DNA of 64,000 nt from Hyphochytrium catenoides. Taxonomy: Eukaryota > Protista > Hyphochytriomycota. The notes below the pieces were generated by a model. It had not been told where the DNA came from. It did no database searches and was given only the letters and a program-made list of their open reading frames with translations. The stretch's first letter is position 1, and each line of letters begins with the position of its first letter. Shown here piece after piece: positions 56 to 13,060 of the stretch. The stretch is taken from assembly GCA_900088475.1 (NCBI GenBank), contig FLMG01001065.1, forward strand, positions 4,093 through 68,092. The letters are read 5' to 3'. Position numbers and translations under genes: made by a program.

Positions 56-1201
56 TACACCTTCGACCAAGCCAACGCCGTCATTTATCAAGCTCTCTGG
101 CTTCTCTCTCCTCTTCTCTTTCTCCCACAAATCAAAGAGTCTTTCCAAATGAAGAAGAGACTCTGTCTCGCATCTCTCTCTATGGCTTTAACGGCTTCTT
201 ACGCCTTTGTCCCTTCCTCTCTCGAAGAGAGAGACCCAGAACTCTATGAAAATGCCTTGGAAATTTCTTCTCTCATTGGCGCGGTTGGTTTGCATCTCTA
301 CACTTTCTCTCTCTCTCTCTCTCTCATTCTCTCTTCTTTCGCTAATGAATGGAATGTCTCTGCGCCTTCCGCGAAGAAGAGAGCAAACATTCAAAAGCAT
401 GAGAGAGAAGAAGAAGCAGGGAAAGAAGCAGAGAGAGGAGGAAAGAAAGGCACCAAGGAAAAAGGGGAGAAGAAAAAGAAAATTCTTGTCTCTCCTTTCC
501 CTTCCTCTCTCTCTCCTCCTCCTGAAGAGAAACAGTCTGACGAGGAGAAGAAAGGAGAGAAGAAGAAAGAGAGCGACGGTACACTAGAAGACAGAAGGAG
601 AAACCAGCAGAGAGACAACGAAGACAGAGAAAGAGAGACTCCAGACGAGGAGAAGAGAACAAGAGAAAGAAAAAAGAGAGACGAAGAAGAAGAAAGAGAC
701 GACTTTCCTCTTCTCACTTCCACAGAGGAACTGAAGAGTTTCCTATGGAGAGCTTCCCGGGAGCAGAGAGAGACTTTTCAGTCTTTCCTCGTCTCGGAAT
801 TTTGCGTGGAGAACATCATTTATTATGAAAAGTCTATGGAGTTTAAGAATATCGGAAAAGGAGAGAGAGAGAGAAAAGAAGAGACGGGGAGAGAGAGAGA
901 GAAAGAGAGTGGCGAGGGAAGAGGGGAAGAAGAGGACTTGAAGAAGGTGGAGGAAGACGAAGAAGAGAAGGCGAAGCAGAGACGACTTCTCCTTTCTCAA
1001 GAAATGCTCTCTCTCTTCATAGTTCCCGGTGTCTCCCTGGAGATAAACATTAGCACAGAAATGCGAGAGACACTTCTCTCTTCCTCGGAAAGAGAGAGAG
1101 AGAGAGAAACCTGTTGGGACGCCGCGGATGAGGAACTTCTCAAGTTGATGCTGGATCCCTATATGCGGTTCGTGATGAAGAGAGAGAGACGGAAGAAATG
1201 A
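56..1201 (+). CDS. Terminal exon of a 7TM-RGS protein (last TM helices plus C-terminal RGS domain); 5' exons lie upstream of the window
   Basis: Pyrimidine tract + AG acceptor at 54-55 opens the frame of ORF 149..1201. RGS motifs FQSFLVSEFCVENIIYY, LFIVPGVSLEINIS, WDAADEELLKLMLDPYMRF follow hydrophobic segments. KESFQMKKRLCLASL aligns with KEAFNMKGRFIKASL of the paralog at 29805-32452. Confidence 0.8.
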   Translation, partial: YTFDQANAVIYQALWLLSPLLFLPQIKESFQMKKRLCLASLSMALTASYAFVPSSLEERDPELYENALEISSLIGAVGLHLYTFSLSLSLILSSFANEWNVSAPSAKKRANIQKHEREEEAGKEAERGGKKGTKEKGEKKKKILVSPFPSSLSPPPEEKQSDEEKKGEKKKESDGTLEDRRRNQQRDNEDRERETPDEEKRTRERKKRDEEEERDDFPLLTSTEELKSFLWRASREQRETFQSFLVSEFCVENIIYYEKSMEFKNIGKGERERKEETGREREKESGEGRGEEEDLKKVEEDEEEKAKQRRLLLSQEMLSLFIVPGVSLEINISTEMRETLLSSSERERERETCWDAADEELLKLMLDPYMRFVMKRERRKK

Positions 1202-1758: not shown

Positions 1759-4276
1759 CTACGAGAGAGGAGAGTCATACCCTTCTCCTATTTTTAGAGT
1801 TTCTCCTCCCAGGACAATGTCCACCTCATCTCTTGAACTTCCTTTCTCTCTCTCTCTCTCTTCCTCTCTTTTCCCTTCTCTCTCTTCATAGTACTGTGGG
1901 TCTTGGTCTCTGAGAGTAGATGACGATAAAAGAGAGAAAGACCGTGATCTTCGGCCTCTCAAACGTCCGCCCTGTTCCTCTTCTTCACCTTGCCTTGCTC
2001 TCTCGTTTCTTTCTCTCTCTTTCCCTCCTACCATCATTCCGTCTTCTCGCTCTCTTCCTGGAGAAGAGGAAAGATGGCGCCGGGGAGGTGACTGCTGGGA
2101 AGAAGAAGAACGAGAGAGAGAACGGCGGTGTCTCTTCTCTCTTTCCTCTCCTCCTGCTGGAACTGACTCTCCCTCAAACGCTACAGGCTTCTGCTGCTCA
2201 GAATTTCCGAGGGTCCTGGCCCGCTAATGGCGATGGTGTCAGTTAAATGGAAAGAGAGGAAGAGAGAGAGAGAGCGAAAAGAGAGAAAAGGAATCTTTCC
2301 TGAATGAGAAATAAGATAGTGAGCACAGCAAATTGCGAAGAAGACAGAGAGAAAGGGTCAAGCAAGAGAGACAGGGAAACGGAGAGAAAGAGATAGAATA
2401 AAGGAAGAGGAAGGGAGAGACCATGAGAGAGAGAGGGACAGAGAGAGAGAAAGAGGGAAAACCGTTGACTTCTTACCTGTCTAGAGGAAGCTCTTCTTAG
2501 GGCCACTGGAGAATCAGAAAGAGAAAGAGAGGCCCTAGGCGCATCTTCCCGTAGGGCGTCTCTCTCTTCCTTCTGCTGCGGTGATTGAGAGGAGAGAGAA
2601 AGAGAGTATGGTGCTCTTTCCTCTCCTCTCGCCTGTGGCTTGCGTTGCCGAAGGGAGAGAGACTTTTCTGGGGTCGAGGAGAGAAAGGCAGAGTTTGAAT
2701 TTGAGGAGAGAAGAAGAGCGGCGTTTCTTAAGTCAATCTTAGAGGTTTCCGCCAATGCTTCGGAGAGAAGCTTGTGAATCCACTGAAGCTTGATGTTGGC
2801 GTCGGCAACTAAGAGAGAGAATAAGAGAAAGAGTATCAGCGGGGAGAGAAAAGAAAGAGAGACGAGTCAACTCTTTGCCGAAAAACGAAGAGACATCAGG
2901 CATTCCCGAGAGACATAGAAGAGAGCAGAATAAGAAAGGGAAGAGACAGAAAAAAGTCGTTGCTGAATGACAGAAAAAGCTTTGAGGAGAGAAGGAGAGA
3001 AAAGCTTACCAGCCTGAGACTCTCTTGCATTTATTGCTGGCTCCCTTGCGTTATTGCTCGCCACTGAGTAATCCATAACCTTTGGCTCCTTCAAAGGCAA
3101 GCCCTGCACCTCTGTATGTTCTTCTAGCTCCAGGCGGAAGAAGGTCATTAGAAAGCCGAAGATGGACTTGCAGACGAGATCGAGGAAGGCGTGGATAATA
3201 TAATACGCCTGCCTGCTGATGTGCCCTGAGCCCTGCCAGGAGAAGATAAAGAGGAGAGGGAACAGTGGCCAGAAGCCAAAGAAGACCTGCAGAAAAAGAA
3301 ATGAAAGAGTGGTTAGAGCGCTGCACCTATCTCCATGATGAGGAAGAGAAGAAGGAGGATCAGGGAAGGGTAGAGATAATCTTAGAGAAGACTGTGGAAA
3401 GAGAAAGAGAAAGAGGACAATAAAAGAGGAAGGTCTCCCTGCGGAAGAGAAGGCAGCTAGTATAAATCTCTGAACAAAGAACAAGAGAAACAACGCGATT
3501 AGGCTTGCCAAGTGGTAAGAAGAAAAGAATAGATGAATGAGGAAAAGAAGGAGAGAGAAGAAGATTACATCTTGAAGAGAGACAGAGATAAGTGAAAGGA
3601 GAAGGAAGCGTTTCTTCTCGAGGACGAAACGATGAGACCACATCAGAAGGCATATCCATGCATCCTGGAAGCCGCCTCAAGCCATTGTTCCACGTACCAC
3701 GCACGCCCAAAACAGCAACCTTTGGCACTTGGGCGGGTACACCTGGTACCTCTTCTTGACGTCTCTTATGAGAAAGAGAGATAGCGGAATGAACCAGCAG
3801 CAGCCCAGCGCATAGTAGGCAAACCGAAAGGCTGAAGGCGTGGCAAAGGCCGCGACGGCGCACCACAGAGCAACAAAGACAGCAATGGAATAGCGCAGCT
3901 TTTGCGGTATGTCCAGCGTGAAGGCAAAGTCTACGATCAGCAAGGGACAGGTGAAGACATAGTCTAAGTACCAGTACCAGTTGAGAGAGAAAGGCGTGCC
4001 GCCGCCGTCGAAGAAGTCAAAGCTCTTCGCGGCGTACATTGTTCCGCATAAGAGGCAAACAATCCCTGATATTGAGTTCACTTCCGGAGCGCGGCCGGAC
4101 TTGTAGGGCTTACACGAGTATCCCATCCCGAGGTCGAGACGGTAGAGCATCCAGATTCCAGATCCAGCGATGGCGATAGCAGAGATGGCGCAGATGCTGC
4201 CCAGCAGCGGATAATCCATGTCATTGACGCTGCCCCTGGGCCATCCCTCAGGTGGGCGAGAGTCATAGAACGGCAT
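1759..4276 (-). CDS. KCR2: Kalium (K+-selective) channelrhodopsin, KCR2 type; predicted exons 4276-3698, 3286-3010, 2808-2477, 2223-1759 (~550 aa)
   Basis: 7TM rhodopsin MPFYDSRPPEGW...NWYWYLDYVFTCPLLIVD...HAFLDLVCKSIFG with W102, D105, T109, C110, D116, W210, Y221/Y222, D229, K233 and A136/A140. All three introns are GT..AG, phases 0/1/0 close in frame, and intron positions equal those in the paralog. Recognised from memory as HcKCR2. Exons 3-4 are less certain than exons 1-2. Confidence 0.93.
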
Positions 4277-4839
4277 CCTTCTCTCTCTTTCTTTCTCTCT
4301 CACACGATCTCTCTCTGTCGCCTCCTTTTTCTATCTTTTTATTCCCTTGTTGTTGCTTTATATTTCTTCAATGCGTCGCGAAATGTGGATTGGTTGAGAG
4401 AGAGGAAAGGCGAAGGAGGATATGACAGAGGCTCAATGACGGCAGGTCTCTCCTTGTTACTTTTCGTCCACCGTCTTCTTCCGCCTGCGTCTGCCAGTCA
4501 CTCTTACCAGGACCGACCGACCAGCAAGAAGAACAGAAAAGGAGATACTACTGATAAAGAGCTAGAGTATTATCATAAGCTCGTCTTCCGCTTGACTTGG
4601 GAATTGAGTTCTAATGAAGCGTCGGATGATGAGGCTCTGGCAAGAGCAGCAGCTGGCCACAGCGCAAGAAAGAAGCGAGAAACAAAGAAGAGAGAGAAGG
4701 GGATCAGAAGAGGGAAATTGAGAATTAGAACCATATTCGAAGATTGAAGTAGTGGAGATGACCAGTTCTGAATGATCTGCAGATCAAAAGGAGAGAGAAG
4801 AGGGATGGGAAGCGAGAGAGAAAGAGAAGTGAGGAGGCA

Positions 4840-5160
4840 GAAAGAGGAAAAGAGATAGAGAAAGAGATAAGAATGAAGAGAGAAAGAGGGCGCGGAGGAG
4901 AAGAAAAAGAAGAAGAAGAAGAGAGAGAGAGAGAGAGACAGAGAGCTAGAGAGAGAGAGCAAGGGGAAAAGAAGAGAGAGGAAAAGTGAGAGAGAAGAAA
5001 AGTGAGAGAGAGGAAAAGAGATAGAGAAAGAGATAAGAATGAAGAGAGAAAGAGGGCGCGGAGGAGAAGAAGAAAAAGAAGAAGAGAGAGAGACAGAGAG
5101 ACAGAGAGCTAGAGAGAGAGAGCAAGGGGAAAAGAAGAGAGAGGAAAAGTGAGAGAGGAG
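4840..5160. repeat. Purine-rich local tandem duplication (~170 bp unit, 2 copies) upstream of KCR2
   Basis: gaggaaaagagatagagaaagagataagaatgaagagagaaagagggcgcggaggagaag occurs at ~4845 and ~5010. Confidence 0.7.
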
Positions 5161-5239
5161 AAAAGTGAGAGAGAGGAAAAGAGAGAGGAACCAGAGAGGA
5201 AAAGTGAGAGAGAGGAAACGAGAGAGGAAAAGAGAGAGG

Positions 5240-5280
<41 letters not shown>

Positions 5281-6299
5281 GATGTATCACACTCATATCG
5301 GTCACTGGTTGAATGACAGTATTATATTACTTAATTAGGGGAGTTACAGGCGCAGAGACCATGTCAGAAGACTCATTGCATTGAACAACAAGGATGGGCC
5401 TTCGGGCGTAACTGCTCCATCGCCTTCATAGCATGTGTGTGTGTATGTCCATACGATATCGCACCGAGGCCGAGACTACTTGTAAGTGGACTTATATGGC
5501 ACGTACAACTACCAAATGCCAGTCATTTGTACTTACAATTGCTAGTGCCGGGTAAAACAGTACTTGTACTTGTAGTAATCACCACACACACCTAGAACTA
5601 CCGCGTACCTTAGAAGTTCTACCATCGTCTCTAGGTCTGCAACGAGGCTGGTCAATATATTCTCTGAAAAGCTCCGGCCAACCGCGAAGTGTCCGTACTA
5701 GTTAGTAGTGCATCTATTTTTAGAACGACGCGTGCGTAGGAGACTGTAAGATTTGGCAATCGGCTGATTTCACATACGTAAGGGCGGTTGGTGAAGGAGT
5801 GATAGTTCTCGAGATCGTAGAACGATTGGAAAGTCGTCCAGGCTACCCTACTGGCCATTTATAGAACTAAAACTTTCTCTAATAAAAGTATTGAATTTTG
5901 TTATACCCCTGTCTTTATACGAGTGCCCGCACATGCCTCTACAAGGTGCTTTCTTTGTACTACTGTTTTACCACTTATTACCACTTTTATGTGGTAGTTC
6001 TACTCTTCATTGCATGGCTCTTGACTCTTCACCCGACAGCACGTAATTTTGGTGTTGGTTCTCGGCACTTATGATACCGTGGGACTCTCACTATGTATAT
6101 GGCTGTATTATGGATCAATGGGGCGCCTGACATTTGTTGTTGACTGCTGGCACCTAGTGCCAAGAACTCTGACTAAGATGGACGCCACAAAGCCTCATCT
6201 CTGTGGCAGTTTAGAGGCCTGTCAAAGCAAGAAAGGTACGACCGTAATCGTATCCGCTTCTCTTTCTGAAAATAGCGACAATGTGTTTTCCTGGCTCTC

Positions 6300-8760
6300 C
6301 ATGCCCCTGTCGCGACCCCTTGGTCGCTTCTTCCTCCTCAACCTGATCTCCTCCACACTCATCATCAGTGAAGGAAGAATCATAATTGATCTCTTCAGTA
6401 ATAACATGGGGAGAAGGAGGAGGAGGAGGAGGTGAATCATTATCAATCACAATGTCATCATCAGCAACTTCAAACGCCGCTTGTTATTTATAAGTAACAG
6501 GCCCCGCTGTCGTGTGGGCCCTTGGCCGCCTTTTCTTCTTCCGTCTTTAACCATTTGAAAATGATTGTTTCGAGAATGCCACCTTCTGCGCCCTTCCTTG
6601 CCGCCTTCCATGATTATACTCCCCTCTCTTCTTCTGCACTCTTTCCTGCTTCTTCTTCCTCCCTTGCTCCTGCCGCTGCTCCTGCTTCTGACAACACCCC
6701 CTTGGCTGCTGGCCGTGAACAGGATCAAGATTTCCTTCTTCCTCTCTCGCATTATTCGGTGGTGCGTCCTTCGGTCAATGATGCCCGGCGGGCCCGTGGT
6801 GGGGGCCGAGTGAGGTCCTAGCTTCCCTGCTCTTCTCTTCTCTTTGGCCTATTTGGCTCTTTCTCCATTCTCTTTTGTTGCTTCGTAGTACATATTTGCA
6901 TCTCTTCATCTTCTTCAAAAAGTAGTCGATTATACACGCCTTACTAATTTCTGAAAATATCATTTTTGCTTTTGTACGGCCAGGCAAAGTTGCTGACCGC
7001 TAGAGGTCTTATTTGCCGGAGAAGCCGCCGTTCGTTACAACTCTCAGTCAGAGATTTCCAGATTGATGACAGAGACTCTGGATTGATATTTAGAGCTTCA
7101 ATAGATTGAGATTTCTGACGAATAAAGACCTTGAACTCGGAATCTAGCGGGGCTTGCACGAAGGGAACTAAGCGCAAGCTTACATGGTACAACGAATGAT
7201 TCTTCCTTTACTGATGATGAGTGTGGAGGAGATCAGGTTGAGGAGGAAGAGACCAAGGCATTGTAGCTTTCCTGGTTTCTTTTCTTCTTCCATTTTTTCT
7301 TCTTCTTCTTCTTCTTTTTCTCGATCCTCCTCTTCTTCTCCATCCTCTTCTTCTTCTGCTTTCTTCATCTTCTACTTCTTCTTTTACTCTTTAGCTAAAA
7401 AATCGTCTCCTCTTCATTTCTCTTCTCCTTCTTCTCCTTTTCCTCCTCCTCCTCCTTCTTCTGCTATAAAACCCCTCGTCTCGTCCCCAGCTTGATCTGC
7501 TCCGCGCTTATCATCAGTAAAGGAAGAAGCATTGTTGATCTCCTCAGTTAATAGTAAGGGGAGAAGAAGGAGGCGAAAGAGGTGAACCAGCAACCACAAC
7601 GTCCTCATCATCAAGCTCGACCGCCGCGAGGCAAGCAAGAGAAGGTCTTTTATAAACGAGCGTGTTTTTATAAAGGCCGTGGCTAGTAGACTACTCCTTA
7701 AGAAAGGAGATAGAAAATACTACGAGCAAGAAGAGGAACAAGAGAGAAAAGTAATGGGATAGAAAGAGAAAAAAGAGGAGAGAAGCATCAGGGAGCATCA
7801 AGGGCGGCCGATGATCAGGGAGGATCGACAGGAAGCGGCGGGTGCTGCGGCGACACCGAGGAAGCGGGGAATTCATCATCATCCTCACCAATAATGCGAG
7901 AGAGAAACATCATCATGCTTGATCCTCCTTCCGAAGGACAACATGAGGAGAGATTATAGAAGTAGAGGCCGCCGTATCTTTTTGAGGAGAAGGAGGAGAA
8001 GGAAGAAAAGAAAGAGGAAGAAGAAGAGAGCGGAGAAGAATTGAAAACAGGGAGAAACGGCGGCAGAACGAACCAGCAGGGAAACAATCATTCGGGTCGC
8101 CTCCTCGTGCAACAGAGCCAGGGACCCGCTTGTCTGATCAGACGCTGTCTAAGGTACTGCACATCGCGTTGAGCTGTGACCTTTCGATCGGCTTTGGATG
8201 CGCAAATGGCTTGCAAAGGCCTCCGCCATTGGGACATTGGGACAAAGGCCGCCACACTGGCCGACCTTCCCTCCACCAAAAGACTCCCAAATCAGAGCAA
8301 AAAAGTCGATGCGGCGGTGGGCATTGCAAACAGCCAAGATAGTTCTTTTCTTAGCCTGATGAGAATATTATCCAGACCGATCCGCTGCATAACGAAGGAC
8401 ATATTCTTATCAGGCTAAGAAATGAGCTGAGCCTATAATCACTGTTGTTGGCCCAGTCATTTTCACTCGACGTCCATCTGGGCTCGCAATGATATCAACA
8501 GTGAACGCGGAAGATAGGTGGTTATTCTACTCTCCACGCTTCTCTCCTCTGTACCGAGCCTCACTTCGGATCTTTTACTTTAAGAAAGGTTGGACCTCGC
8601 TCTAGCTTGCATGATTGAGCGTGATGATGATGATGGTCTCGGCGCCACGGCGTCCTCTTCTTCTCCTCTTCCGTCTCCTATCATTATTGCGGAAGAGTTC
8701 AACTATGACTCGTCTTCTTTCGGTTGATAATGAATGATGGTGGCTGGAGGAGAACGTGGT
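6300..8760. repeat. Cluster of decayed dispersed-repeat copies in both orientations between the KCR genes
   Basis: 6330-6390 is the reverse complement of 7195-7250; 6360-6470 is repeated directly at 7510-7620; 8615-8740 matches the reverse complement of 42960-43100. Confidence 0.65.
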
Positions 8761-10007
8761 GAAGAGGAGTCGAGGACTATGTGGTTCTTGTCTCTTCTTC
8801 CTCCTTCTTCTTCGTCTTTTGCTTCTTCTTAGCGATCTTCTAGTCGTGCCTGTAATAAGAGATCCTGCCAACGCGGATAGAGAGAAGCAGACCGTCGCCT
8901 TCATTGGGCATAGCAGCCGTTGGCCGGATCTCCTTCGCCTCCTCTCCTGTGAGATTCTCCCTCGACTGATTCGCGGTTCTATATCTATGCTTCTAGTGAT
9001 GGTGACGTCCTTGTTCTGCTCTTATTGCAGACGAGGCGGCGGGTCCACCGACGTTTAGTCTCTTTCTCTCTAATGCTGATGAGCCTACGACCGGTAACTC
9101 TTCTTAGCACTGGCAGCAGCATCTTCCAAAATCTCTCGGGCCGTTCAGCGGTGCTGCTGCACATGAGGTCCCAGTCTATCATCTCCATCATCAGTGGTAC
9201 GATGCTGCCAATGCTTGGCAGACTCAAGAATAAAATGTTTGAAGAAGGTAAAAGCATGAAGAAGAGGGAGGAGAAAACTTAGAGAGTGGCGAGGGTACCA
9301 ATGGATAGAGAAGAGAAGGAGCTAAAAAGGGAGACATAAATAAGAGAGTGGAATGAGAAGCTAAAGAAGGAAGGAAAAAGTTTATTAACTAAAAAACAAT
9401 GAGAGCCGAAAAGAGAGAGAAGAGAGAAAGAGAATAGAGACAACAAGAGAGAGAGAAAGACGAAGAGAGAGAGAGACACACGAAGAAAGGTAAATAACGA
9501 ATAACTATGGGAAGAGAAGGGAGAAGAAGGATAGAGAGAGAAGAGAGAGAGGGGAATAAAAGAGGTAGAAAGAAGAGAGAGAGAGACTAAGTGGAGAGAT
9601 AAGGCGTATATATGGGAAGGGAAGGACTCCAGGGTAGTGGTATCACTTTTTGGTTTCTTTTATCTCTTCTTTTCTTTCTGTCAGAACCGCTACTGCAGCT
9701 CTCCAACAATGTAATCAGCTACTTCATTCGTTGCATGGAAAGCACATAACGTCACTGGAGCCTCTTTCGGGAATTTCACGAAGAGAGAGAGAGAGAGAGA
9801 GAGAAAAAAAGAGAGATAGAGAGGGAAAAGGAGAGCCTCCTGAAAATGGAAAGGGAAAGGACAGAGTATCTTGTTATCATCCCTCCTCGGGAAAAAGAGA
9901 GTCGTATCCTCCTGTGTCATCTCGACCATCTCCTCCACTAGTAAGAACCGTCTCCTTCTCTTTGTTTCTCCCTCTTGTTTTTCTCTCTCAACTTCTTCTC
10001 TCTTCTT

Positions 10008-10353
10008 TTATTCTCCCTCTTGGTAGTCAGATTCTCCCCCTCTCTCTCTCGCCTTATGAGGGGAATATCGAGAACGCTGCATTCCTTCACCAATCAGCCC
10101 GTTTTCTCCAAGTCTTTCTCTTTCTACGTCTCTCTCGCCGTTTTCTTCTCCAATATCTCTCCTCCTATGCCCTCCTCTCCCTTCCCTTGTAGGAGAAGGG
10201 GAGGATCGGCAAGAGAGAGAGTGATTGACTGAGGAGGAAGAATGAGAGAGAGAGCGGCGGTGTCGTCTCTCTCTTGCCTCCTCTCCTCGTAGTGTCCCCG
10301 CCCCTATTGCGTCTTGTTCCTGATGTTGTGAGCTCTCAGATGCTCTCGCGCGC

Positions 10354-10398
<45 letters not shown>

Positions 10399-13060
10399 GT
10401 CAGATAAAGGAAGAGAAAAAGGAGTGCAATGGAGAGAGAGACCGATAGACAAAGGGACAGACAACTGAGATAGACGAAGGGAGAGAGAGCGAGAGAGAGG
10501 AGAAGAGACTTGGGAATATTAGGACTATAAAGACAAGCGAGGCACAAAGCCTTGCAGGGTGACACACATCCATATGAAAAAGGTAGGAACGAGGAGAGAG
10601 AGAGAGGGAGCGACAGGGAGAGAAGGAGAGAGAGAGAGAAGGGGAGAGACAAGGGGAGAGAAAAGAGGAAAGAGAGAGAGACAGAAAGAGGGTCACACCT
10701 GTCTAGAAGAAGCTCTTCTAAGTGCAGACGAACAATCCGAAGGGACAGAGGGCACAGCAGGAGTATTTCCGGACAGCGCAATGGCAGCTGATCCTTCTTT
10801 CCCTTCCATGTCTCTCTCTCTTCCAACTCTTTCTCCTCCTTTGTCCTTTTGCGAAGGAGAAGAAGGAGGAGGAGAGAGTGCTGAAGAAGCTGGCAAATCG
10901 GAAGGTCTGTCTCCTGCTTTCCCCTGCTGTTTACGATGGCGAAGAGAAAGAGACTGTCTCGAGTAAGAGAGAGACACAGGTTTGGGAGAGGGAAGAGCGT
11001 TGTTTCCTAGGTCAATCCTTGAGGTTTCTGCCAGCGCCTCGGAGAGAAGCTTTTGGATCCACTGAAGCTTGATGTTGGCGTTGTAGACTACAGGTAAAGG
11101 AGGAGAGGAACAGAGAGAGAAAGAGAGAGAGAGAATAGTGAGAGAAATGCGGAAAAAGAAAAAACAAGAAGAGACAGACAGAGAGCTTGCAAGAGATCAT
11201 GAGTAAAGGAGGAGTCAGTAAGCCCAGAAAGAAAGAAAGGATGGAAGGTTAAGAGAAAGGAGAGAGAGAGAGAGAGAGTTGCTAGCTCTTGATGAAGAAA
11301 GGGAAGGAGAGAAAGAGAGGCGACGCAGGAGGAGGTCAAAGCAGAAAAGCAGAAAAGAGAGAACAAGGAGAGGATCTAAAGAGAAGTCAAAAGACCCAGA
11401 AAAGGATAGAGAAGCTTGAGAGAGAGACGTCATCTTTTTTCTCTCCCGACAGAAAAACCAACTTACCAGCCAACGGATCCGTGTCACCAGGAGGAGGAGG
11501 CATCACTGAAGAAGAAGAAGGTTTAACGCCATAGGCGCTCTCGATGTCCAAGGACAAGGTTTCTGGCTCATTGAGAGGCAGACCTTGGACTTCTGTGTGT
11601 TCCTCGAGCTCCAGGCGGAAGACGGTCATGAGGATGCCAAAGATAGATTTGCAGGTGAGGTCCAGGAAGGCGTGGATGATGTAGAAGGCTTGTTGGCTGA
11701 TGTGCCCGGTGCCCAGCCAGGAGAAGATAAACAGGATAGGGAACATCGGCCAGAAGCCGAAGAAGATCTTCCCCAAAAAAGCGGGAGGAGGGAGGGAGAG
11801 AGACACAGACGGGCAAGGAGGAGAGAGAGANNNNNNNNNNNNNNNNNNNNNNNNNNNNNNNNNNNNNNNNNNNNNNNNNNNNNNNNNNNNNNNNNNNGAG
11901 AGAAAGTTGCAAGAACCCCAGAGTAACACAATCGTTAGTCCCAGAGGAAAGGGGAAAACGAAGCAAAAGACGTTCGAGGGGAAGATGATCGGAAAACAAA
12001 GAGGCGAGACAGAGTGGAGAGAATGTAACAGAAATGACGCTATCGACGAGAGACATAAAGGAGGAGAACCTTGTAAGAAAAAGAAACGATGCAGAGAAGA
12101 GTAAAATCGAAAGGTGTAATATGTATATAATGACAAAAGCAGAAAAAAGAGGAGAGACCGAGCGGAGAAGAAAGCCAACCGGACGACGCGAGAAGAGAAA
12201 GAAACTAAGAAAGGAGATGATATTAGAGCATTGGAGATGCAGTGAGAAGAAATAGAGAGAAAGGCGACAAAGAGAAAGAAGGAAACATTGTTGGCACAGT
12301 GGAAGAGGAAAAACGGACACCGAAGTAAGAGAGAGAGACAGCGGAAGACGACAAGACAGAGTGAAACACAGGCATGCTCTAGAATGGAAAGGGAGAGAGA
12401 ACGCGACAAAGTAGCTGGTAAGAAGAAGAAGAAGAAGAAAAGCAATGTTATCCTTGGCGTTCTTCTTCCACGACCACCTACCACGCACGCCCAGAACAGC
12501 CATCTCTGGCACTTGGGCGGGTACACGAGGTATCTCTCTTTCACGTGTCTCATCAGAGAGAGAGCAAACGGAGTAAACCAGCAGCAGCCCAGCGCATAGT
12601 AGGCAAACCGATAAGCCGACGGCGTGACAAACGCCGCGACGCCGCACCAAAGCGTCAAAAAGACTGCAAAAAAGTATCGGATCTTGTGCGGCAGATCCAG
12701 CGTGAAGGCAAAGTCTAAGATAAGCAAGGGACAGGTGAAGACATAGTCTAAGTACCAGTACCAGTTGAGAGAGAAAGGCGTGCCGCCGCCGTCGAAGAAG
12801 TCAAAGCTCTTCGCGGCGTACATCGTTCCGCATAAGAGACAAATGATCCCGGATAGAGAGTTCACTTCCGGCGCGCGGCCGGACTTGTAGGGCTTACACG
12901 AGTATCCCATCCCGAGGTCGAGACGGTAGAGCATCCAGATTCCAGATCCCGCGACGAAGACGCAACAGACGGCGCAGATGCTGCCCAGCAGCGGATAATC
13001 CATGTCATTGATGCTGCCCTTGGGCCATCCCTCAGGTGGGCGAGAGTCATAAAACGGCAT
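10008..13060 (-). CDS. KCR1: Kalium (K+-selective) channelrhodopsin, KCR1 type; predicted exons 13060-12482, 11767-11467, 11087-10699, 10352-10008 (~537 aa; ~424 aa if intron 3 is retained, stop at 10693)
   Basis: Spliced product ...LFWACV|IFFGFWPMFPILFIFSWLGTGHISQQAFYIIHAFLDLTCKSIFG...EPETLS with F88, N99, W102, D105, T109, C110, D116, T136, G140, W210, F221, Y222, H225, D229, K233. GT..AG introns sit at the same positions and phases as in the paralog. Recognised from memory as HcKCR1. An N-gap (11831-11897) lies inside intron 1. Confidence 0.94.

What the first reader, a model, noticed from the sequence alone, without database searches (positions are those of the whole stretch)
1759..13060. 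Tandem pair of pump-like rhodopsins with the signature of light-gated K+-selective channels (kalium channelrhodopsins)
Seen: two co-oriented paralogs 8.8 kb apart with identical exon structure, 7TM rhodopsin domains, Schiff-base K233 in DLxCK and a DTD motif (D105/T109/D116, equivalent to bacteriorhodopsin D85/T89/D96). The conserved Arg (BR R82) is replaced by Trp102, C110 is present, and F88/W102/W210/F-Y221/Y222 plus N99 cluster on the extracellular side. There is no TVGYG filter. Established: this combination defines KCRs, monomer-pore K+-selective photochannels used as inhibitory optogenetic tools. From memory these are HcKCR1/HcKCR2 of Hyphochytrium catenoides, so the system is described rather than new, though a naive annotation would call them proton pumps. 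Inference: native role in zoospore photobehaviour via hyperpolarisation, which to my knowledge is unresolved.
Basis: partly seen in the sequence, partly recalled or inferred. Interest (0 to 1): 0.97.

Follow-up and report, generated by a model that had tools for sequence, protein, structure and literature searches.

The report
Known potassium channelrhodopsin genes HcKCR1 and HcKCR2

Summary
The observation and the interpretation both hold, and the system is already described.

- **Identity.** Two minus-strand genes start 8,784 bp apart. Joining exons 1 and 2 of the upstream gene (13060-12482 and 11767-11467) gives a protein identical over all 265 residues to the solved HcKCR1 chains (PDB 8GI8, 8H86). 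The same join in the downstream gene (4276-3698 and 3286-3010) is identical to HcKCR2 (PDB 8H87).
- **Residues.** There is no GYG.
- **Assembly gap.** The gap at 11831-11897 lies inside intron 1 of HcKCR1, 64 nt before the acceptor. Contig ends on both sides run into a (GA)n repeat. The exon join across it reproduces the published protein, so no coding sequence is affected.
- **Exon structure.** Both genes have the same four-exon plan, giving predicted proteins of 537 and 550 aa. Exons 3-4 rest only on paralog conservation and GT-AG sites, because no RNA run was listed.
- **Third paralog.** HcCCR is not in this window. The 2018 genome paper already lists two adjacently numbered rhodopsin genes and a third elsewhere.
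- **Open question.** The native role remains untested.

The scan had already noted this stretch, its tails and HcCCR in other notes.

The parts
12482..13060 (-). HcKCR1 exon 1 (codons 1-193: N-terminus, TM1 to TM6)
   Evidence: 193/193 identical to PDB 8GI8_A and 8H86_A. Pfam PF01036 Bac_rhodopsin.
11768..12481 (-). HcKCR1 intron 1 (GT-AG), holding the assembly gap 11831-11897
   Evidence: Donor GTG|GTAGGT and acceptor GGGGAAG|ATC. Contig loose ends at 11830 and 11898 read (GA)n.
11467..11767 (-). HcKCR1 exon 2 (TM7 with Schiff-base K233, then the start of the cytoplasmic tail)
   Evidence: Residues 194-265 are identical to 8GI8_A. Phase-1 donor CTG|GTAAGT.
10699..11087 (-). HcKCR1 exon 3, predicted (cytoplasmic tail)
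   Evidence: In-frame island conserved with the paralog (tblastx 85% over 27 aa). GT-AG borders. No RNA evidence.
10008..10352 (-). HcKCR1 exon 4, predicted, including the stop codon
   Evidence: Open frame from the acceptor to the stop, with conserved RHRRSLS island. No RNA evidence.
3698..4276 (-). HcKCR2 exon 1 (codons 1-193)
   Evidence: 193/193 identical to PDB 8H87_A. Pfam PF01036.
3287..3697 (-). HcKCR2 intron 1 (GT-AG, 411 nt)
   Evidence: Donor GTG|GTACGT and acceptor CTGCAG|GTC.
3010..3286 (-). HcKCR2 exon 2 (TM7 with K233, then the start of the tail)
   Evidence: Residues 194-265 are identical to 8H87_A. The chain diverges only where the construct's linker begins.
2477..2808 (-). 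HcKCR2 exon 3, predicted
   Evidence: Conserved with HcKCR1 exon 3. GT-AG borders.
1759..2223 (-). HcKCR2 exon 4, predicted, including the stop codon at 1759-1761
Evidence: Open frame from the acceptor to TAG.

Best explanation
The stretch holds the native genes of the two kalium channelrhodopsins of Hyphochytrium catenoides. HcKCR1 lies at 10008-13060 and HcKCR2 at 1759-4276. Both are on the minus strand, in tandem, and each has four exons.

Each gene encodes a seven-helix retinal protein of the bacteriorhodopsin-like (pump-like) cation channelrhodopsin clade. According to the published work on these exact sequences:
- light isomerises retinal bound to K233 and opens a pore inside each monomer of a trimer;
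- K+ is preferred over Na+ (PK/PNa about 23 and 17);
- the preference arises because aromatic side chains W102, F/Y221, Y222 and H225 on the extracellular side form a size filter, and D116 on the cytoplasmic side also contributes.

Shown here: identity of the coding sequence, gene structure, tandem arrangement, and purifying selection on the 7TM domain. Taken from the literature: channel function and selectivity. Inferred only: that in the organism these channels hyperpolarise zoospores in light, and that the long C-terminal tails are translated.
For: - Identity to solved HcKCR1 and HcKCR2 chains is 100% over residues 1-265, with E-values of 1e-134 to 1e-137 for exon 1 alone.
- All signature residues are at the stated positions.
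- Paralog-specific residues match the papers.
- Published PK/PNa values are 23 and 17, and 25.7 in an independent laboratory. In that study, W102Q and Y222A lost selectivity.
- The pair is under purifying selection and is not a recent copy: dN/dS is 0.20 and dS is 0.46 over the 7TM domain.
- The 2018 genome paper lists rhodopsin genes Hypho2016_00006030 and _00006031, numbered consecutively, and a third, _00010050. This fits a tandem pair here and no third copy in this window.
Against: Nothing contradicts the identification. Limits:
- No RNA run could be listed, so exons 3-4 and the protein lengths of 537 and 550 aa are predictions.
- A database search for full-length relatives returned nothing.
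- Function was not and cannot be measured with these tools.
- A 2026 preprint reports that KCRs also act as H+ pumps without K+, so 'channel only' may be too narrow.
Confidence: 0.98

Rival explanations
1. The genes encode non-selective or Na+-preferring pump-like cation channelrhodopsins such as the third paralog HcCCR, not K+-selective channels.
For: HcCCR is the next best PDB match, with E-values of about 1e-97 to 1e-102 for exon 1. It shares W102 and the DTD motif.
Against: - Both genes are residue-for-residue HcKCR1 and HcKCR2, not HcCCR.
- The three positions that separate the classes read L69/I73/Y222 and I69/V73/Y222 here, against F69/S73/T222 in HcCCR.
- An earlier follow-up of this scan places HcCCR on another piece of the genome.
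Confidence: 0.01
2. The two copies are alleles or an assembly duplication of one gene in a heterozygous diploid genome, not two paralogous loci.
For: The genome paper reports a diploid with about 2.75% SNP frequency and a short-read assembly with gaps. Some contigs of the source runs lie on both copies at 90% likeness.
Against: - The copies differ at 45 of 265 residues, with dS of 0.46, far above allelic divergence.
- Their introns differ in length and are not alignable.
- They lie 8.8 kb apart in one scaffold with unique sequence between them.
- Each equals a different published protein with a different action spectrum.
- The 'other letters' in the laid contigs are simply the paralog's bases at 16 of 17 places.
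Confidence: 0.01
3. In the organism the proteins work mainly as light-driven outward proton pumps, as a naive reading of the DTD motif and the Pfam hit would suggest.
For: - Pfam sees only Bac_rhodopsin.
- The proton acceptor and donor aspartates of bacteriorhodopsin are kept.
- A 2026 preprint reports H+ pumping by KCRs in the absence of K+, and detectable pumping with K+ present.
Against: - With physiological K+ inside the cell, the published currents are passive, reverse near the K+ potential and are large.
- The arginine equivalent to bacteriorhodopsin R82 is replaced by W102.
- A cell always contains K+.
Confidence: 0.03

Closest known systems
HcKCR1 (kalium channelrhodopsin 1 of Hyphochytrium catenoides; PDB 8GI8, 8H86, 8IU0)
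   Same: The exon 1+2 translation of the gene at 11467-13060 is identical over residues 1-265.
   Different: Nothing differs in the 7TM domain. The genomic gene is predicted to continue into a tail of about 270 aa (537 aa in all). That tail is absent from the expression constructs.
HcKCR2 (PDB 8H87)
   Same: The exon 1+2 translation of the gene at 3010-4276 is identical over residues 1-265.
   Different: After residue 265 the PDB chain carries construct sequence. The genome continues with a native tail, for a predicted total of 550 aa.
HcCCR (Na+-preferring paralog; PDB 8GI9, 8IFU)
   Same: Same clade, with the same W102 and DTD motif. The literature gives 70-73% identity in the 7TM domain.
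   Different: It has F69/S73/T222 in place of L or I69, I or V73 and Y222. It lies on another piece of the genome, not in this window.
Pump-like / bacteriorhodopsin-like cation channelrhodopsins (ChRmine, GtCCR2/4, B1ChR2)
   Same: Clear sequence homology: B1ChR2 has E 1.7e-24, GtCCR4 1e-12 and ChRmine 2e-7. The literature reports trimers with a pore in each monomer.
   Different: Hydrophilic residues lining the extracellular vestibule of ChRmine are aromatic in the HcKCRs (F88, W102, F144, F/Y221, Y222), which gives K+ selectivity.

Membership tests
Kalium channelrhodopsins (KCR) | Microbial-rhodopsin 7TM fold with the retinal-binding lysine in TM7 | tested here: met
   Pfam PF01036 matches exon 1 of both genes. 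K233 sits in DLTCK / DLVCK.
Kalium channelrhodopsins (KCR) | Bacteriorhodopsin-like DTD motif (D105, T109, D116), which places the protein in the pump-like cation channelrhodopsin clade | tested here: met
   The residues were read from the spliced translation of both genes. The literature describes the motif.
Kalium channelrhodopsins (KCR) | Trp at the position of bacteriorhodopsin Arg82 (W102) together with Tyr/Phe at 222; both are required for K+/Na+ discrimination | tested here: met
   W102 and Y222 are present in both genes. The requirement is stated, and the mutants W102Q and Y222A lose selectivity.
Kalium channelrhodopsins (KCR) | TM2 positions 69 and 73 are aliphatic (L/I, I/V), not F/S as in HcCCR | tested here: met
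   L69/I73 in the upstream gene and I69/V73 in the downstream gene, against the paper.
Kalium channelrhodopsins (KCR) | No canonical K+ channel signature (TVGYG) | tested here: met
   No GYG in either predicted full-length protein.
Kalium channelrhodopsins (KCR) | Measured light-gated passive current with PK/PNa well above 1 | not testable with these tools
   Published for the identical sequences: 23 (HcKCR1) and 17 (HcKCR2), and 25.7.
Kalium channelrhodopsins (KCR) | Sequence identity to the type members | tested here: met
   265/265 to HcKCR1 and 265/265 to HcKCR2 PDB chains.
Light-driven outward proton pumps (bacteriorhodopsin type) | Conserved Arg at the bacteriorhodopsin R82 position in the proton-release pathway | tested here: not met
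   W102 is found in both genes. [quoted passage not shown]
Na+-preferring cation channelrhodopsin HcCCR | F69, S73, T222 | tested here: not met
   L/I69, I/V73 and Y222 are found.

The most novel reading that the evidence does not exclude
The only part not covered by the literature I read is the native gene beyond residue 265. Both genes are predicted to add a cytoplasmic tail of about 270-285 aa. The tail is mostly low-complexity, but it has islands conserved between the paralogs:
- a helix-like ANIKLQWI.KLLSEALAETS.IDL segment just after exon 2;
- two basophilic-kinase-type sites, ALRRASSRQRAR and RHRRSLS.SSSS.

If these tails are translated, they could control gating, trafficking or localisation of the channels in zoospores. 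That would explain why two spectrally different K+ channels are kept. All published work uses the tail-less 1-265 constructs.
Probability: 0.25. Interest if true: 0.4.

Novelty: already known. Interest (0 to 1): 0.1.

Why it matters
KCRs matter a great deal as inhibitory optogenetic tools and as the only K+-selective channels without the tetrameric TVGYG filter. That importance has been in the literature since 2021, and these are the type genes themselves.

This check adds bookkeeping only:
- exact genomic coordinates and intron positions;
- proof that the assembly gap is intronic;
- the tandem layout with a 5.7-kb spacer;
- a dN/dS estimate;
- predicted full-length proteins with untested tails.

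The biological question of what a non-photosynthetic, fungus-like protist does with two light-gated K+ channels stays open and needs experiments on the organism.

Tried and rejected
- **RNA evidence for the gene models.** The look-up of sequencing runs with kind rna listed no run, so exons 3-4 could not be verified.
- **Bridging the gap with the source DNA runs.** Logan contigs of X1-X3 stop at both edges of the gap in (GA)n, and none spans it.
- **Full-length relatives.** I ran the search for homologous proteins with the 557-aa read-through frame of HcKCR1, scoring residues 1-193, so that proteins of 306-975 aa would be seen. 226 word-sharing candidates were found and none scored below 1e-5. 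This is a blank, not evidence of absence. I ran no further search on the short length class, because the PDB matches already settle identity.
- **A third rhodopsin in the window.** tblastn of both proteins against the 64 kb found only the two genes.
- **Pfam on the predicted tail exons and on the larger ORFs of the spacer.** No family was found.
- **Variant letters in contigs laid on HcKCR1 exon 1.** I considered whether they were alleles. At 16 of 17 places they equal the HcKCR2 base, so they are the paralog's contig laid at 90% likeness.
- **blastn between the two gene regions.** It was swamped by GA/CT microsatellite hits. Only three real blocks emerged: exon 1 with about 75 nt of leader, exon 2, and the start of exon 3.
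Full report
**What is there.**

The region holds two genes on the minus strand. Both begin with the same N-terminal peptide, MPFYDSRPPEGWP. The start codons are at 13060 and 4276, which is 8,784 bp apart. The stop of the upstream gene and the start of the downstream one are separated by 5,731 bp.

Exon 1 and intron 1:
- Exon 1 is 579 nt (193 codons) in both genes and ends at the same valine codon, before a GT donor.
- Intron 1 is 714 nt as written in the upstream gene and 411 nt in the downstream one, and it ends in AG.

Exon 2:
- It carries the seventh helix with the Schiff-base lysine.
- It ends one base into a codon at a conserved CTG|GTAAG donor.

**Identity.**

I searched each exon translation by reference against the sequences of all solved structures.
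- Exon 1 of the upstream gene is identical over 193/193 residues to chains named Kalium Channelrhodopsin 1 / HcKCR1 (8GI8, 8H86, 8IU0; E about 3e-137). Its exon 2 continues the identity from residue 194 to the end of the 265-residue construct.
- Exon 1 and exon 2 of the downstream gene are identical in the same way to HcKCR2 (8H87; E 3e-134). They diverge only after residue 265, where the deposited chain carries construct sequence.
- The next best matches are HcCCR, then B1ChR2, GtCCR4, GtCCR2 and ChRmine. Bacteriorhodopsins appear only at E about 1e-4.

The upstream gene is therefore HcKCR1 and the downstream gene HcKCR2. The window must come from Hyphochytrium catenoides or a nearly identical strain.

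In the spliced translations, both proteins have F88, N99, W102, D105, T109, C110, D116, W210, Y222 and K233. Position 221 is F in HcKCR1 and Y in HcKCR2. H225 and R244, also implicated in the literature, are present. Neither predicted full-length protein holds GYG.

The 45 differences between the two 265-residue domains include exactly those the papers name:
- V73 (KCR2) against I73 (KCR1);
- Q/L211, R/Q218 and Y/F221;
- A136/A140 against T136/G140, which another note of this scan links to colour tuning.

**The assembly gap.**

The N run at 11831-11897 lies within intron 1 of HcKCR1 (11768-12481), 64 nt upstream of the acceptor.

Three results show that it does not touch coding sequence:
- The acceptor and donor are intact on either side.
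- The join of 12482 to 11767 reproduces residues V193-I194 of the published protein.
- Contigs of the DNA runs that hold this sequence end at 11830 and 11898, with loose ends reading (GA)n.

The gap is an unassembled dinucleotide repeat, and only the intron's length is uncertain. No contig bridges it, so strict continuity of the scaffold at this point rests on the assembler's pairing and on the exact protein match.

One trap for annotation: the HcKCR1 frame stays open through the whole of intron 1, giving a 557-codon ORF at 11387-13060. A purely ORF-based call would therefore insert about 240 spurious residues.

**Downstream exons.**

Outside exons 1 and 2, the only non-microsatellite similarity between the two loci is a block at 2802-2615 against 11081-10906. 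In the frame that continues exon 2, it reads as a conserved peptide, 85% identical over 27 residues.

Using GT-AG borders, I obtain:
- exon 3 at 2808-2477 and 11087-10699;
- exon 4 at 2223-1759 and 10352-10008.

This gives proteins of 550 aa (HcKCR2) and 537 aa (HcKCR1), with the same intron phases in both genes.

The tails are 47% identical over aligned positions. The conserved islands are ANIKLQWI.KLLSEALAETS.IDL, SLSLR.RK, ALRRASSRQRAR and RHRRSLS.SSSS. They have no Pfam domain.

These exons are predictions. No RNA run was listed, and a protein search aimed at full-length models returned nothing.

**Paralogs, not alleles.**

- Over the 265 codons, dS is 0.46 and dN is 0.092, so dN/dS is 0.20.
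- The introns are of different length and do not align.
- This divergence is far beyond the roughly 2.75% heterozygosity reported for this diploid genome.
- The variant letters seen when contigs were laid on HcKCR1 exon 1 equal the HcKCR2 base at 16 of 17 places, so they come from the paralog.

**How it works.**

This part comes from the literature on these exact sequences, not from tests here.
- HcKCR1 and HcKCR2 are light-gated channels with action maxima at 540 and 490 nm and PK/PNa of 23 and 17. An independent laboratory found 25.7 for HcKCR1.
- Cryo-EM shows trimers with a pore inside each monomer.
- W102, F/Y221, Y222 and H225 form an aromatic constriction on the extracellular side, with N99 hydrogen-bonded to Y222.
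- W102Q and Y222A nearly abolish selectivity, and D116 also contributes.
- Three changes (F69L, S73I, T222Y) turn the Na+-preferring paralog HcCCR into a K+-selective channel.
- A 2026 preprint adds that KCRs pump H+ when K+ is absent.

**Known or new.**

The 2018 genome paper already lists three type I rhodopsin genes: Hypho2016_00006030, _00006031 and _00010050. The consecutive numbers of the first two fit the tandem pair seen here. No third copy lies in this window, and an earlier follow-up of this scan found HcCCR on another piece of the genome.

The discovery paper used the 7TM domains of two of these predicted proteins. I found no statement in the papers read about the tandem arrangement, the intron positions or the tails. 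These are details of a known system, not a new one.

The native function is discussed only by analogy with algal phototaxis receptors. In the genome paper's photoreceptor section I found phototaxis reported only for zoospores of some stramenopile algae, not for this species.

**Verdict.**

The novelty class is 'already known', so the interest score is low despite the importance of the family.

Noticed in passing
window 149-1201 (+): A 350-codon ORF with a Regulator of G protein signalling domain (Pfam PF00615, E 9.5e-8, residues 206-342) converges on the 3' end of HcKCR2. It ends about 560 bp from the HcKCR2 stop codon. Much of the ORF is Glu/Lys/Arg-rich low complexity, and its true gene model is unknown.
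   Followed up: partly
window 11387-13060 (-): The HcKCR1 reading frame stays open through all of intron 1 and across the N gap, giving a 557-codon ORF. ORF-based annotation would therefore fuse exon 1, the intron and exon 2 into one false protein.
   Followed up: yes
window 1759-3009 and 10008-11466 (-): The predicted C-terminal tails of both channels share short conserved islands, including two Arg-Arg-x-Ser motifs of the kind used by cAMP- or cGMP-dependent kinases (ALRRASSRQRAR, RHRRSLS). All published constructs stop at residue 265. Other notes of this scan cover these tails.
   Followed up: partly
window 6329-6383, 7196-7250 and 7481-7533: In the spacer between the two genes, a 55-nt segment recurs as an inverted repeat 812 nt away (98% complementary). 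A third, more diverged copy (83%) lies 233 nt further on. No ORF nearby has a Pfam match. It may be a small foldback or transposon remnant.
   Followed up: no
window 4800-5290: Upstream of HcKCR2 there is a purine-rich (GA/GAA) low-complexity tract that contains a tandem duplication of about 163 nt (4897-5024 against 5060-5187, 95% identical). Similar GA/CT microsatellites fill introns and leaders throughout the region, and they cause the assembly gaps.
   Followed up: no
window 12723-13051: Contigs of the source DNA runs laid here with 10-17 differing letters are the HcKCR2 exon 1 sequence (16 of 17 differing letters equal the paralog's base). They are not alleles of HcKCR1. This is a caution for read mapping on the pair.
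   Followed up: yes
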